Shown here one piece after another: positions 30,508 through 35,472 of a stretch of DNA of 64,000 nt (its first letter is position 1; each line of letters starts with the position of its first letter). The notes beneath the pieces were generated by a model. That model had not been told where the DNA came from. It saw nothing but the letters and a program-made list of their open reading frames with translations, and ran no database searches. The stretch is taken from the NCBI RefSeq assembly GCF_039654945.1, contig NW_027361682.1, positions 24,676,001 to 24,740,000 of the forward strand. Direction: 5' to 3'. The position numbers were made by a program, and so were the translations under genes. Source of the DNA: Dendrobates tinctorius (Eukaryota).

Positions 30508-31650
30508 GAAGCGTAGCTAGGGGTTCAGCTCAGTGTGGGGCAAAACATGTGAATGGGCCTCTAACTGGTAAGCCTGATGGTGGTACACCCTGATTGTTGG
30601 TATAAGAGAACCTCAGCAGTTGACTATGCGGTTACATAAAATAAATCTTTACACAAAGATGAGTACAGATATTATATAGTGAGTGACCATATAGTGATAG
30701 ATTTTAGTCAGGCTGAACATACAGTACAAGTGATTATAGTATATTTATACATAGTAACTTACAGATGAGGTTTCTGATGGAGACGTTTACTTTTGCCGTG
30801 TTTCAATCTGGCCCACACCAACATGACAACTTCTCCAGCCATGACTCATCTGCTCTTTTATAAATGATATTCCTACAGCTCCACCATATACAGTATGTTG
30901 GGCCAACAGCTCCTCTATACACAGTATGATGGGCCTACAGCTCCCTTATACAGAGTATGGTGTTCCCATAGCTCCTCTATATACAGTTTAATGGGCCCAC
31001 AGCTCATACACAGTATGGTAGGCTCATAGCTTCCTGATATACTTTATTGTGGGTCCACAGCTCCACTATATACAGTTTAGTGTCCCCATAGCTTGCCTAT
31101 ATTCAGTATGATGGGCCGCAGCTTCCCTATACATGGTATGATGGGCCCACAACTTCGCTACACACAACATAATACCCCCACAGCTCACCTATACATAAAA
31201 TCAAGTCCCCACTGCTCCTTTAAAACACAGTATATTGACAACAACAGTATCCCTCACACTGTATAATTGCCCCCACAGTAGAATCCATAATGTAAAATGG
31301 CCACCACACAGTAAAATGACCTTCACAGTAGTCCTCACACTTTGATGACCTCCACAGTATCACTGTATAATGGCCCCTGCATTAGTTCCCACACTGTATA
31401 ATGGCCCTCAGAGTAGTCCCCACACTGTATGATTGCCCCCACATTAGCCCCCAAACTGTACAATGTTCCTCGCATTGACCCCCTAAACTGTATAATGGCA
31501 CTCATATTAGCCACAAAACTATATAATGGCCCCTACATAAGCTCTGAAACTGTACAATGGTCCCAATATAAGACCTAAAACTGTATAATGGTCCTCACAT
31601 TAGCCCCCAATCTGTATAATGACCCCCAGCATTAGCCTTCACACTGGTAG
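30508..31650 (+). mobile_element. Truncated non-autonomous hAT-like element with internal minisatellite (about 30880-31640)
   Basis: Starts agaagcgtagctagggg, like the 58380 element; contains cacagtatgatgggcccacagctc and actgtataatggcccc repeats. Confidence 0.6.
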
Positions 31651-31871
31651 CACACTTTACAATAGCGTTAATAAACACACCCCTTGGGTGGGTTTGGAGG
31701 TAACTAGTTCCTGACACATTGAACCAGCACCTCAGCAGTATCACTGCTGATTAACACACACATAAATCTCCATCTCAATGCCACCCACCTTGAGATACAT
31801 AATGGTCATTCCGTATTTCGCCTTTCATCCACTCTCCTGGGACATCCATACAGCGCCCCCTAGCGGACACA

Positions 31872-32866
31872 GTGGTCACTACACCACAGGGCTTTATGGA
31901 AAGTGGGGAGGTCAGGGAGGTCTTGACTAATGTTCAGGACTTGTTGGCTAGGTTGGATCGTGGGATAGTTGAGCAGGGGCATTTATCGGCTTGGGTGGGT
32001 CAGCAAGTGATGGGATATTTTCGCCTGGTCAGAACAGAGGAAGTGGTAGTTTTGCTGGCTGAACCTGTCTCTGTTTCGGTACAAACTGAGAAAGAAAAGG
32101 ATTGTCGGATTCACTTAGATGACAGGGCACATGGGGAGGTTTATGTGTGTTTTGAAGGTACATTGGGTGCACATCTTAAGGAGATTAGGGAGCGGATTTG
32201 GAAGGATGAGTATGTGGAATTTTTTTCTTTGCTTCCTCTGGAGAAATTTAATTTGGACAAGGGTAGGAAGGATGACAGTAAGAAAGAGGATGAGGAGAAG
32301 CGGAGGTGTAGTCTGATCCCCCAGACGTTTATTAATTGGCTTCAGGTTTTTGCAATTTTGGCCAGCGTTATAGGGGAAAAGGAGCCTGAAAATTGTTCTG
32401 AGTTATTTTGCTATATGGATTCCATTGGGGAGGCATATAGAGTATACGGGGCAGCCGTGGCTCAGGTATGATGAGCAATTTAGGCAGTGGAAGGCTATTC
32501 AGCCGGCGCTCAGGTGCGACCAAAAGGACATCGGGCTTTGGTTGCGAGTTATGGCGCAGTATAAGTTCGGCCATTCCTTTCTGGGGGGCTGGAATCCCCG
32601 GCCAGGTTAATCAGCCCAGTTCTTCAGGGTCCACAAGTCAATTGGGACAACCAAGGGGGCACAAATTGGGCTTGTGTTGGCAGTTCAATGAAAGGCAGTG
32701 CAAATTTGGAGCCAACTGCAAATTTAAGCATCTTTGCTCCCATTGCAGTGGCTCCTCTCATGGGGCCACTACATGTTTCCGAAAAGTTAAGTCAAAGTCG
32801 CGGGGCGATAATCCTCAAGGGGGAGACATCGGTGAAGCTGGAAAGGATGGCCCCTTATCTAAGTAG
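31872..32866 (+). pseudogene. DIRS gag-like ORF1 (frameshifted)
   Basis: IRERIWKDEYVEFFSLL..WLQVFAILASVI..WLRYDEQFR..C3H zinc finger. Confidence 0.85.
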
Positions 32867-33911
32867 GTATCTAGATAAAATTAAGGTAGAGTTGTTGCTT
32901 TCTAGTTTTAAAGAGGGTTTTGTGACCCCGGCACCCCCGTTTGCTGTTCCTCGGGTCATTAAAAATGTGCGGTCGGCGGTGTTGTACAGTGAGGTGGTAT
33001 CAGAGAAATTGCATAAGGAGTTGTCTTTGGGACGCATGGCTGGTCCTTTCGCAGAGCCGCCTTTTGAGGATCTGGTTGTTTCGCCTTTGGGAGTTGTGGC
33101 TAAAAAGGAGGCAGGAAAATTTAATTTGATCCTTCATCTGTCTTATCCTCGGGGGCTGATGGTTAATGATGGTATTGAAACTGAGCTCTGCTCTGTGGTT
33201 ATGCATCATTTGATGAAGCTGTGGCATGGGTTTATAAGTTCGGCAGCGGGGCCCTCTTGGCTAAGACAGATTTTGAGTCAGCTTTTCAGTTGCTGCCGGT
33301 TCATCCGAACAGTGTTAAACTGTTAGGTTGTTTTTGGGCTGTCGTCTGAACTTAAAGGAGATTTGGATGTTTGGAGTACATTTTTGGAGGATTATAACAG
33401 CCGTTCGTTGCTTATGGAGGAGGTGGTTGACAATGATACTCTAGAATTGTTTACTGATGCATCAGGAGGGATCGGTTTTGGTGCTTACTTTAAGGGCCAG
33501 TGGTGTGCGGCTAAGTGGCCAGTGGCTTGGATTTCTTCTGGTTTGGTAAAAAGCATTGCGTTGCTGGAGATCTTTCCAATTTTGGTGGTGGTGCATTTGT
33601 GGAGACAGGAGTTCCGTGACAGGTGAATTCGTTTTAACTATGACAACATGGGAGTGGTTTGTGCAATCAATTGTCTGACTGCGTCGTCACCTCCGGTTGT
33701 GCGGGTGCTGAGGCAGTTGATCCTATACTGTTTGGCTTTGAATTCTCATGTGACGGTGTCTCATGTGCCAGGGGTCCACAATTCCATCGCTGACTCTTTT
33801 TCTTGCTTACAGTTTGATCGTTTTCATTTGTTGGCTGCAGAGGCGGAGGTCATCGGATTGGAGTGCCCTGCGGAAATCTGGAATGTGGTCTCTGGGATGC
33901 TGAGTCGTTGA
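32800..33911 (+). pseudogene. DIRS RT/RNase H; the RT core including YxDD is deleted near 33340
   Basis: AKTDFESAFQLLPVHP..LLG joins directly to ELKGDLDVWSTFL and the RNase H motifs. Confidence 0.85.
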
Positions 33912-34801
33912 TACGGTCATCGTTGGCTACCAAGACTTGGGAGACTTATCAGGCAATCTAGTCTTTCTGGGAAGGCTTGTTAGCTAGGAGATCCTGTAGG
34001 CCGGGGGTGGATGATAAAGTGGGGATTTTGTTGTCTTGGTTGAGTAGAGGAGATTTGGAGGGTTGGTCATCTGCGAAAGTGTGGCGTGTTATGGCAGCCC
34101 TGGCTTTTGGTTTTAAATTGCGGGGTCAGCGGGATTTGTCCAAAGTCTTTTTGGTAATAAAACAGGCACTCAAAGGGTTTCCGCTGGAAGCATAGCCATG
34201 AGGACTTGAGGCGTCCAGTGACTTTTAATCTGTTGTAAAGAATGGGAGGAGTTTTAATTTCTTTCTGTTTGTCGGATTTTGAGCTTTGCCTTTTTAGGTT
34301 GGCTTTTCTTTAGCCTTTTTTGGGATGCTGAGAGTAGGTGAGTTGGTTTCTTCTAGCAATAAAGGGATGGGGGGCTGTTAGCTAGGGATGTGTTTTTGTC
34401 ATCCAGACAAGTGAAGTTTTGGTTGCGCTGTTCGAAATCGGATCAGGAGGGAGGGAAGGGAGAGGTGTATTGTGTTGAGTTTGGTTGATGGTTCGGTTAT
34501 GTGTCTGGTTGGTTGTCTGAAGCGTTTTTGGTCTTTCAGACTGAGTAGGGATGGAGCCCTGTTGTGTCATGCTGATGGTTCCATTTTATCTCGGTATCAG
34601 TTCATGGTGATTTTTAGGAAGGCTGTTAAATTGTTGGGCTTGGATGAATCTCGTTTTGCTCCTCACTCTTTTAGCATTGGGGCTGCAACGGAGGCAGCAT
34701 TGGGAGGATTGGGTGCTGATGCTATTTGGCATATTGGAAGGTGGCAGTCCAATAGGTATCGTGTTTATATGAGGTCGCAAGGGGCGGTAGAGAAATTTTA
34801 A
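33897..34801 (+). pseudogene. DIRS tyrosine recombinase
   Basis: FFGMLRVGEL, SKSDQ.G.G, HSFSIGAATEA, IGRWQSNRYRVY; stops and frameshifts. Confidence 0.88.
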
Positions 34802-34871
34802 TGTCTTATGTGCTCTCATTTGTTTTTTGCTGTGTTTTTGTTGTTTATTGTTGTTGTTTGTTTTTTCCCAG

Positions 34872-35472
34872 GTTCTTCACCATTACTTGTGTGGATATTC
34901 GGCCATTCCTATGTCCAATTGGGTGCCTTATGGGCTGACGTGCGGAAGGAGGGTAGACAGCTTGGCCTTGCATGAAGATTGGCGGTGGTCCCTTGGCTCG
35001 GATTTAGTGGGATGGCCTGGAACAGGGTCTTACGTGAGATTCATAATAGTGTTCATTGGATAGTGCTCCGGACATTTTGGTTCTGCACGTCAGCGGTAAC
35101 GATTTGGGCGTTAGGCCTTTCAGACAATTAGTTAGAGGCGTAAAACAGGATTTATTACAGTTATGGCTTTTGTATCCGGGTTTGACTATTGTGTGGTCGG
35201 AGATAGTGCCACGTAAACGTTGGCATCATATGAGGTCTTTGGTTAAAATTGACAAGGCGAGGATAAAGGTTAACAAAGCTGTGTCTTCCTTTGTGTCTAG
35301 AAACGGGGATGTTGCTGTGAGGCATTTTGAATTGGAAAAAGGGGAGGGTGAATTTTGGCTGACTGATGGGGTTCATTTAAATTCAGTGGGTAGCGACATT
35401 TGGGCTCTCGGTTTGCAGGAGGACATCGAAAGGGTCATAAATTTTCGGTTTGGTGGGGTCTCGAGCCTTTGA
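34872..35472 (+). pseudogene. SGNH/GDSL-type hydrolase ORF of the DIRS element
   Basis: Block I WIFGHSYV, block II GFSGM, block III HVSGNDLG, block V DGVHLN; one stop and one frameshift; no ATG, preceded by ttttttcccag. Confidence 0.82.

What the first reader, a model, noticed from the sequence alone, without database searches (positions are those of the whole stretch)
34338..35472. DIRS/Ngaro retrotransposon carries an ATG-less SGNH hydrolase ORF behind a strong 3' splice site
Seen: all four SGNH blocks (GHS, G, GND, DGVH) lie downstream of the tyrosine recombinase. There is no start codon, but a long T-rich tract ending ttttttcccAG (34871) opens directly into the frame in phase 1 (xGT TCT TCA CCA TTA CTT GTG TGG). 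Known: some Ngaro-group elements encode an SGNH-like domain whose role is unclear. Inferred: the domain is expressed by splicing. A consensus donor AG|GTGAGT at 34338, in the YR LRVGE motif, is also phase 1. That splice would fuse the recombinase N-terminal half to the hydrolase and remove most catalytic YR residues, a possible regulatory or packaging isoform.
Basis: partly seen in the sequence, partly recalled or inferred. Interest (0 to 1): 0.7.

Follow-up and report, generated by a model that had tools for sequence, protein, structure and literature searches.

The report
Dead Ngaro copy keeps conserved splice acceptor

Summary
The SGNH blocks, the T-rich tract ending in CAG at 34869-34871 and the GTGAGT at 34338 are all present, and both sites are phase 1.

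Two parts of the observation fail:
- The SGNH frame has an in-frame ATG at 34808.
- The "ORF" is broken by a TGA at 34973 and a frameshift near 35036-35056.

The whole copy is dead. It has no ORF1 N-terminus, about 170 residues are deleted from the RT, and the YR carries many stops.

Comparison with seven Ngaro copies from six other frog species supports the acceptor:
- The CAG is invariant in 8 of 8 copies.
- Five of the seven have an in-frame stop and no ATG just before it.
- Gene models in all six species use it (RefSeq models in five).

GGTGAGT occurs there in only 2 of 8 copies, and no model uses it.

The models instead use a conserved phase-1 donor in ORF1 (G|GTGAG, 7 of 7), or a donor a few codons into the YR. 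A second conserved acceptor lies in front of the YR. One B. gargarizans locus has both an ORF1-N::YR and an ORF1-N::SGNH isoform.

I could obtain no RNA evidence for this genome. Other first-stage notes on this genome had already proposed ORF1-to-SGNH splicing on other copies.

The parts
31685..31888 (.). Unrelated high-copy repeat bounding the truncated 5' end of the Ngaro copy
   Evidence: Contigs of three runs pile up only here and run on into unlike sequence after 31888. No ORF1 N-terminal homology lies upstream.
31896..32496 (+). ORF1 (gag-like) core remnant. The N-terminal leader carrying donor D1 is missing.
   Evidence: tblastn against the Leptodactylus L005 ORF1 core gives 75% identity, with a frame change near 32443.
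32441..32863 (+). CCCH zinc-finger part of ORF1
   Evidence: Pfam zf-CCCH, E = 1e-4.
32928..33337 (+). RT N-terminal part, ending at an internal deletion of about 170 residues (RT core missing)
   Evidence: Residues 186-357 of the L005 RT/RH have no counterpart. The matches abut at 33337/33339.
33339..33908 (+). RT C-terminus and RNase H remnant (one stop)
   Evidence: tblastn, 54% identity to L005.
33791..33812 (+). Acceptor A2: pyrimidine-rich codons of the RNase H motif ADSFSCLQ, ending in CAG at 33810-33812 in front of the YR
   Evidence: CAG is present in 8 of 8 copies. Third codon positions are pyrimidine in 40 of 48 cases against a 53% background. Used by the B. gargarizans model P0047.
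33813..34801 (+). Tyrosine recombinase remnant with several stops; stop codon TAA at 34799-34801
   Evidence: Translation. Pfam Phage_integrase, E = 1e-3, on 34415-34798. The N-terminal S-L-A-T-K-T-W motif starts at 33920.
34338..34346 (+).
   Evidence: Score 6.7, but GGTGAGT occurs at this site in only 2 of 8 copies.
34808..34810 (+).
   Evidence: Five of seven other copies have an in-frame stop and no ATG before the acceptor.
34811..34871 (+). T-rich tract and acceptor A3 (CAG at 34869-34871); the exon starts at 34872 in phase 1
   Evidence: CAG is invariant in the alignment of 8 copies. Used by gene models in six other frog species.
34872..35472 (+). SGNH/GDSL esterase remnant: all four blocks present, TGA at 34973-34975, frameshift near 35036-35056, stop at 35470-35472
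   Evidence: Pfam PF13472, E = 7e-4. 55-69% identity to frog homologues. Block coordinates.

Best explanation
Window 31.9-35.5 kb holds a dead, 5'-truncated copy of an anuran Ngaro-type tyrosine-recombinase retrotransposon. Its gene order is ORF1, RT/RH, YR, SGNH esterase.

The T-rich tract ending in CAG at 34871 is the relic of a real, family-wide 3' splice site, which I call A3.

In intact relatives the SGNH domain has no conserved start codon of its own. It is expressed from spliced subgenomic mRNA in one of two ways:
- A phase-1 donor in the N-terminal part of ORF1 (D1, G|GTGAG) is joined directly to A3.
- D1 is joined to a second phase-1 acceptor at the end of RNase H (A2). A short exon follows, then a donor a few codons into the YR (D2) is joined to A3.

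The product is an ORF1-N::SGNH fusion. Using D1 to A2 without D2 gives ORF1-N::YR.

Shown here: the conservation of the sites, the phases, and the exon structure of the public gene models. Inferred: that these models reflect real transcripts and proteins.

In this copy D1 is missing, the D2 positions have no GT, and the SGNH frame is broken, so nothing functional can be made. The GTGAGT at 34338 is a by-product of the codons for G-E-L.
For: - A3: CAG is invariant in 8 of 8 copies within an otherwise 60%-identical stretch. It is always phase 1 and lies 11-23 nt before the W codon of the W-I-F/L-G-H-S motif.
- In 5 of 7 other copies an in-frame stop lies 13-28 nt before the AG with no ATG between.
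- Gene models use A3 in Bufo bufo, B. gargarizans, X. laevis, Dendropsophus, Pelobates and Leptodactylus.
- D1 (G|GTGAG, phase 1) is found in 7 of 7 copies. It follows a T-A-P motif in five of them.
- A2 is present in 8 of 8 copies, with a pyrimidine bias at synonymous sites.
- One RefSeq locus, LOC122926745, has isoform X1 = ORF1-N::YR (XP_044134153.1) and X2 = ORF1-N::SGNH (XP_044134154.1). Dozens of similar loci exist.
- The copy is dead.
Against: - I saw no RNA reads. The only runs listed for this organism are small, held as contigs only, and do not cover the YR or SGNH.
- No contig assembled from public sequencing runs with a spliced junction turned up in the protein searches. Those hits are all of the unspliced type.
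- The evidence behind the RefSeq models could not be inspected.
- D2 differs between species and is absent from the Leptodactylus copy, the nearest relative found.
- About half of the unspliced ORF calls from other frogs do begin at an ATG inside the T-rich tract.
Confidence: 0.72

Rival explanations
1. One reading: the donor at 34338 in the YR L-R-V-G-E motif is joined to 34872, giving a fusion of the YR N-terminal half to SGNH as a regulatory or packaging isoform.
For: - It has the best donor score in this copy and is phase-matched.
- One Bufo model (P0052) does join a donor deep in the YR to A3, so donors inside the YR are sometimes modelled.
Against: - GGTGAGT occurs at this site in only 2 of 8 copies, and synonymous positions vary freely.
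- No model uses this site. The P0052 donor lies elsewhere.
- The YR upstream in this copy is full of stops.
Confidence: 0.05
2. The SGNH gene has its own start (ATG 34808 here). The T-rich tract then encodes a hydrophobic signal or anchor peptide, and translation follows reinitiation or leaky scanning.
For: - In-frame ATG at 34808.
- About a dozen unspliced ORF calls from other frogs start at an ATG in the tract and have hydrophobic N-termini.
Against: - The ATG position and the peptide length are not conserved (6-50 residues).
- Five of seven DNA copies have an in-frame stop and no ATG before the AG.
- T-rich DNA gives F/L/V/C-rich peptides in any frame.
Confidence: 0.07
3. The SGNH domain is made by stop-codon readthrough of the YR, or by a frameshift from it.
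For: YR and SGNH share one frame, separated by a single stop, in the window and in the X. laevis copy.
Against: The frames differ in the Leptodactylus, Dendropsophus and Bufo copies.
Confidence: 0.03
4. The gene models are annotation artefacts, and the conserved tract plus CAG serves another purpose, such as a replication or recombination signal.
For: - No direct RNA evidence here.
- One non-RefSeq model (P0001) pairs the acceptor with an ad hoc donor.
Against: - Three separate sites (D1, A2, A3) are conserved, all in phase 1.
- Several isoforms are modelled per locus, and some chimeric models reach host exons 80 kb away. From my own knowledge, the NCBI pipeline builds such models from aligned transcripts.
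Confidence: 0.1

Closest known systems
Amphibian Ngaro-like elements with an SGNH ORF (e.g. Repbase DIRS-53_XT and DIRS-54_XT; Goodwin & Poulter 2004, as cited in PMC9210276)
   Same: Gene order ORF1, RT/RH, YR, SGNH. No methyltransferase. The host is a frog. The hydrolase has no proven function.
   Different: The published descriptions treat the SGNH as a fourth overlapping ORF and do not mention splicing (no occurrence of 'splic'). A review quoted in PMC13003380 proposes ribosomal frameshifting for the YR. The comparison here points to spliced ORF1-N fusions instead. The window copy is truncated and broken.
Esterase domain of ORF1p in CR1/L2-type LINEs (ZfL2-1 ORF1p, PDB 4C1B; PMC3905857)
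   Same: It is the best solved-structure match to the Ngaro SGNH profile (E = 2.4e-11). It is an SGNH fold carried by a retrotransposon. After splicing, the Ngaro domain would also sit in an ORF1-derived protein.
   Different: In LINEs the esterase is encoded contiguously within ORF1. Here it lies 3.5 kb downstream and would be joined by splicing. That paper lists the CR1, RTEX and Penelope clades and does not mention Ngaro or DIRS.
Spliced subgenomic mRNAs of retroviruses and some LTR retrotransposons (my own knowledge)
   Same: One 5' donor in the first gene is joined to alternative downstream acceptors to express distal genes.
   Different: Here all junctions are in phase 1 inside coding sequence, so the distal proteins inherit a long ORF1 N-terminal module rather than only a leader.

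Membership tests
Ngaro-type YR retrotransposon (order DIRS) | RT/RNase H followed by a tyrosine recombinase on the same strand | tested here: met
   The RT/RH matches the Leptodactylus element, and the YR C-terminal motifs and the Pfam Phage_integrase hit are present. All are degraded.
Ngaro-type YR retrotransposon (order DIRS) | No methyltransferase domain between RH and YR | tested here: met
   The RH motif ends at 33812 and the YR frame opens at the same place, so there is no room for another domain.
Ngaro-type YR retrotransposon (order DIRS) | Split direct repeats (A1 ... B1 A2 B2) | tested here: inconclusive
   No such repeats were found in 28-40 kb. However, the copy lacks its 5' end, so A1 cannot be present.
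Ngaro-type YR retrotransposon (order DIRS) | SGNH ORF downstream of the YR, as in amphibian Ngaro | tested here: met
   literature.
SGNH/GDSL hydrolase | Blocks I (GxS), II (G), III (GxND) and V (DxxH) | tested here: met
   GHS, GFSG, GND and DGVH, at the coordinates given and aligned.
SGNH/GDSL hydrolase | Significant match to the family model or to solved members | tested here: inconclusive
   Against Pfam PF13472 the window fragment scores 20.6 bits and intact relatives about 31 bits; the cut-off is 32.9. The profile of the family does hit many SGNH structures.
SGNH/GDSL hydrolase | Intact reading frame | tested here: not met
   TGA at 34973-34975 and a frameshift near 35036-35056.
Functional 3' splice site (A3) | Pyrimidine tract plus YAG, conserved in position and phase | tested here: met
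   (8 of 8 copies).
Functional 3' splice site (A3) | Junction reads in RNA | not testable with these tools
   Only contig-only runs of uncertain type were offered, and they do not cover the site. The indirect support is the gene models.
Functional 5' splice site at 34338 | Conserved GT in related copies | tested here: not met
   GGTGAGT in 2 of 8 copies.

The most novel reading that the evidence does not exclude
Frog Ngaro elements run a retrovirus-like alternative-splicing programme. One phase-1 donor in ORF1 is joined to two phase-1 acceptors, so that both the recombinase and a LINE-ORF1p-type esterase are made as fusions to a conserved ORF1 N-terminal module. This would replace the published assumptions of overlapping ORFs and ribosomal frameshifting.
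Probability: 0.6. Interest if true: 0.65.

Novelty: new variant of a known kind. Interest (0 to 1): 0.5.

Why it matters
Ngaro elements with a hydrolase have been known for two decades, but how the distal genes are expressed, and what the hydrolase does, is still open. The literature I could reach assumes overlapping ORFs and frameshifting.

Three findings give a concrete, testable expression model:
- A conserved donor and two conserved acceptors are all in the same phase.
- Public gene models join ORF1-N to either the YR or the SGNH.
- The closest solved structure is the esterase of a LINE ORF1 protein.

The model also suggests that the esterase acts as part of an ORF1-type particle protein, as in CR1/L2 LINEs.

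The window copy itself is an ordinary dead relic.

Tried and rejected
- My first idea was that ATG 34801 or 34808 starts a signal peptide, shifted by an indel. I rejected it as the general mechanism because most other copies have a stop and no ATG there.
- RNA evidence: the look-up of sequencing runs listed only three small runs, held as contigs and only guessed to be RNA. Read laying showed cover only over a repeat at 31685-31888 and no joint at 34338 or 34871. This says nothing either way.
- I looked for spliced transcripts among contigs assembled from public sequencing runs, using three protein word searches. Only unspliced-type ORFs were found.
- There is no second Ngaro copy in the window for a within-genome comparison.
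- The Goodwin & Poulter 2004 and Poulter & Butler 2015 papers are not held. The Xenopus paper has no supplements held.
- The homologous D1 and D2 positions in the window have no GT.
- I did not build or search the joined (spliced) product of the window's exons. Exons were handled separately, by reference.

Full report
**What is in the window**

Translating 30.0-35.7 kb in three frames shows one plus-strand retroelement. Its parts, in order:
- an ORF1 (gag-like) core with a CCCH zinc finger, 31896-32863
- RT and RNase H, 32928-33908
- a tyrosine recombinase ending at TAA 34799-34801
- an SGNH/GDSL esterase ending at TGA 35470-35472

It is the only such copy in the window.

The copy is dead:
- It has no counterpart of the roughly 250-300 residue ORF1 N-terminus seen in relatives.
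- An unrelated high-copy repeat abuts it at 31685-31888.
- About 170 residues of the RT core are deleted at 33338.
- The YR has several stops.
- The SGNH has a TGA at 34973-34975 and a frameshift near 35036-35056.

**Checking the observation**

Present as described:
- All four SGNH blocks: GHS 34901-34909, GFSG 35000-35011, GND 35095-35103, DGVH 35365-35376.
- The tract 34811-34868 is 78% pyrimidine and ends in CAG at 34869-34871. The next exon would begin at 34872 with two bases of a Gly codon, which is phase 1.
- GTGAGT at 34338 lies in the codons GTA GGT GAG TTG of L-R-V-G-E-L, also phase 1.

With a rough splice-site matrix written from memory, these are the only strong donor and the only strong acceptor in the copy.

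Two statements are wrong:
- There is an in-frame ATG at 34808-34810.
- The SGNH frame is not open.

**Relatives**

The SGNH fragment finds frog proteins of 200-230 residues at 50-69% identity. I fetched seven loci from six species:
- Bufo bufo (L001, L006)
- B. gargarizans (L004)
- Xenopus laevis (L002)
- Dendropsophus ebraccatus (L003)
- Leptodactylus fuscus (L005)
- Pelobates fuscus (L007)

All are Ngaro copies with the same gene order.

**The acceptor is real at family level**

- In an alignment of the 90 nt before the SGNH domain, the CAG is invariant in 8 of 8 copies, while the surrounding non-coding sequence is poorly conserved.
- The G of the AG is always the first base of a codon in the SGNH frame.
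- In five of the seven other copies an in-frame stop lies 13-28 nt before the AG with no ATG between. The tract is therefore not coding there.
- Mapping the public proteins onto the DNA shows that every model uses this acceptor.

**The donor is not the one proposed**

At the L-R-V-G-E site only the window and L004 read GGTGAGT. The others read GGG GAA, GGC GAA, GGT GAA or GGG GAG. The GT is therefore a synonymous-site accident, and no model uses it.

The models use two other donors:
- **D1.** G|GTGAG in phase 1, in the N-terminal part of ORF1. A phase-1 G|GTGAG is present in 7 of 7 copies, following a T-A-P motif in five of them. Direct D1-to-A3 joining is seen in L006 and L007, with introns of about 3.5 kb.
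- **D2.** A phase-1 donor 11-30 codons into the YR. It sits either at S-L-x-x-G|T-W (L003, L004) or at Y/H-G|K-A-W (L001, L002).

The window and the Leptodactylus copy (the nearest relative found) have no GT at either D2 position. The window has lost the D1 region.

**A second acceptor and a wider programme**

The B. gargarizans model P0047 has three exons:
- ORF1 residues 1-220
- a 41-residue exon beginning at an acceptor inside the RNase H motif A-D-S-L-S-R-L-Q
- the SGNH exon

All junctions are phase 1.

That acceptor, A2, is present in 8 of 8 copies, at 33810-33812 in the window. In the six codons before the CAG, 40 of 48 third positions are pyrimidines. The background in the RT/RH frame is 53%. 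These copies are related to one another, so this is not an independent-sample statistic.

Further RefSeq models show three products:
- full ORF1-N::SGNH proteins, 418-523 residues
- variants that include the small exon
- ORF1-N::YR proteins, 549-553 residues

For LOC122926745, isoform X1 is the YR form (XP_044134153.1) and X2 is the SGNH form (XP_044134154.1). Dozens of loci in the two Bufo species, and one in Hyperolius, follow this pattern.

From my own knowledge, the NCBI pipeline builds alternative isoforms from aligned transcripts. I could not inspect that evidence.

**What the esterase resembles**

A profile of the family matches solved SGNH enzymes. The best match is PDB 4C1B (E = 2.4e-11), the esterase domain of the ORF1 protein of the zebrafish LINE ZfL2-1. 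That enzyme is a weak esterase that binds acidic phospholipids (PMC3905857).

Splicing would place the Ngaro esterase behind an ORF1 N-terminal module. That module itself carries conserved motifs: an N-terminal helix-like motif and an Arg/Pro-rich R-P-P-A-R-L-S-P-E motif, seen in Bufo, Leptodactylus and Hyperolius. My suggestion that the fusion targets the esterase to the element's particle is inference.

**Literature**

- The SGNH ORF of amphibian Ngaro elements is known, with no proven function, and is described as a fourth overlapping ORF. The Xenopus study does not mention splicing.
- A review quoted in PMC13003380 proposes programmed frameshifting for the YR.
- I found no paper describing Ngaro splicing. 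The two primary sources are not held.

**Limits**

- No RNA evidence could be had for this genome.
- No spliced contig assembled from public sequencing runs was found.
All comparisons are between natural copies.

**Verdict**

The acceptor half of the finding is right and reflects a conserved feature. The donor half and the 'no ATG' claim are wrong. The copy itself is an ordinary relic.

Other first-stage notes on this genome had already proposed ORF1-to-SGNH splicing on other copies. The cross-species comparison here agrees with them.

Noticed in passing
window 30855-31640: Long array of degenerate 31-nt tandem units directly upstream of the truncated element.
   Followed up: no
window 36587-38155: 47-nt inverted repeats, 96% complementary, 1475 nt apart, beginning TACAGTCATGGCC. 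They look like the ends of a Tc1/mariner-type transposon.
   Followed up: no
window 31685-31888: Very high-copy short repeat in the three runs laid. The contigs diverge after 31888, which marks the 5' break of the Ngaro copy.
   Followed up: partly
L006 7148-7264 and 87610-87708; proteins P0045, P0048, P0051: Some Bufo models leave the SGNH exon through an internal donor and continue into distant host or other transposon exons (an NXPE-like gene, a Tc1 transposase). This suggests that Ngaro splice sites are being exonised.
   Followed up: partly
L005 2669-2718 and the homologous region of L003: Donor D1 is followed 50 nt later by a conserved pyrimidine tract plus CACAG|G, all inside ORF1. It is too short for a normal vertebrate intron, and its role is unknown.
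   Followed up: no
L005 5241-5350: In the Leptodactylus copy the YR frame has no ATG between the last stop and the conserved N-terminal motif. This fits expression of the YR through acceptor A2.
   Followed up: partly
   Followed up: no
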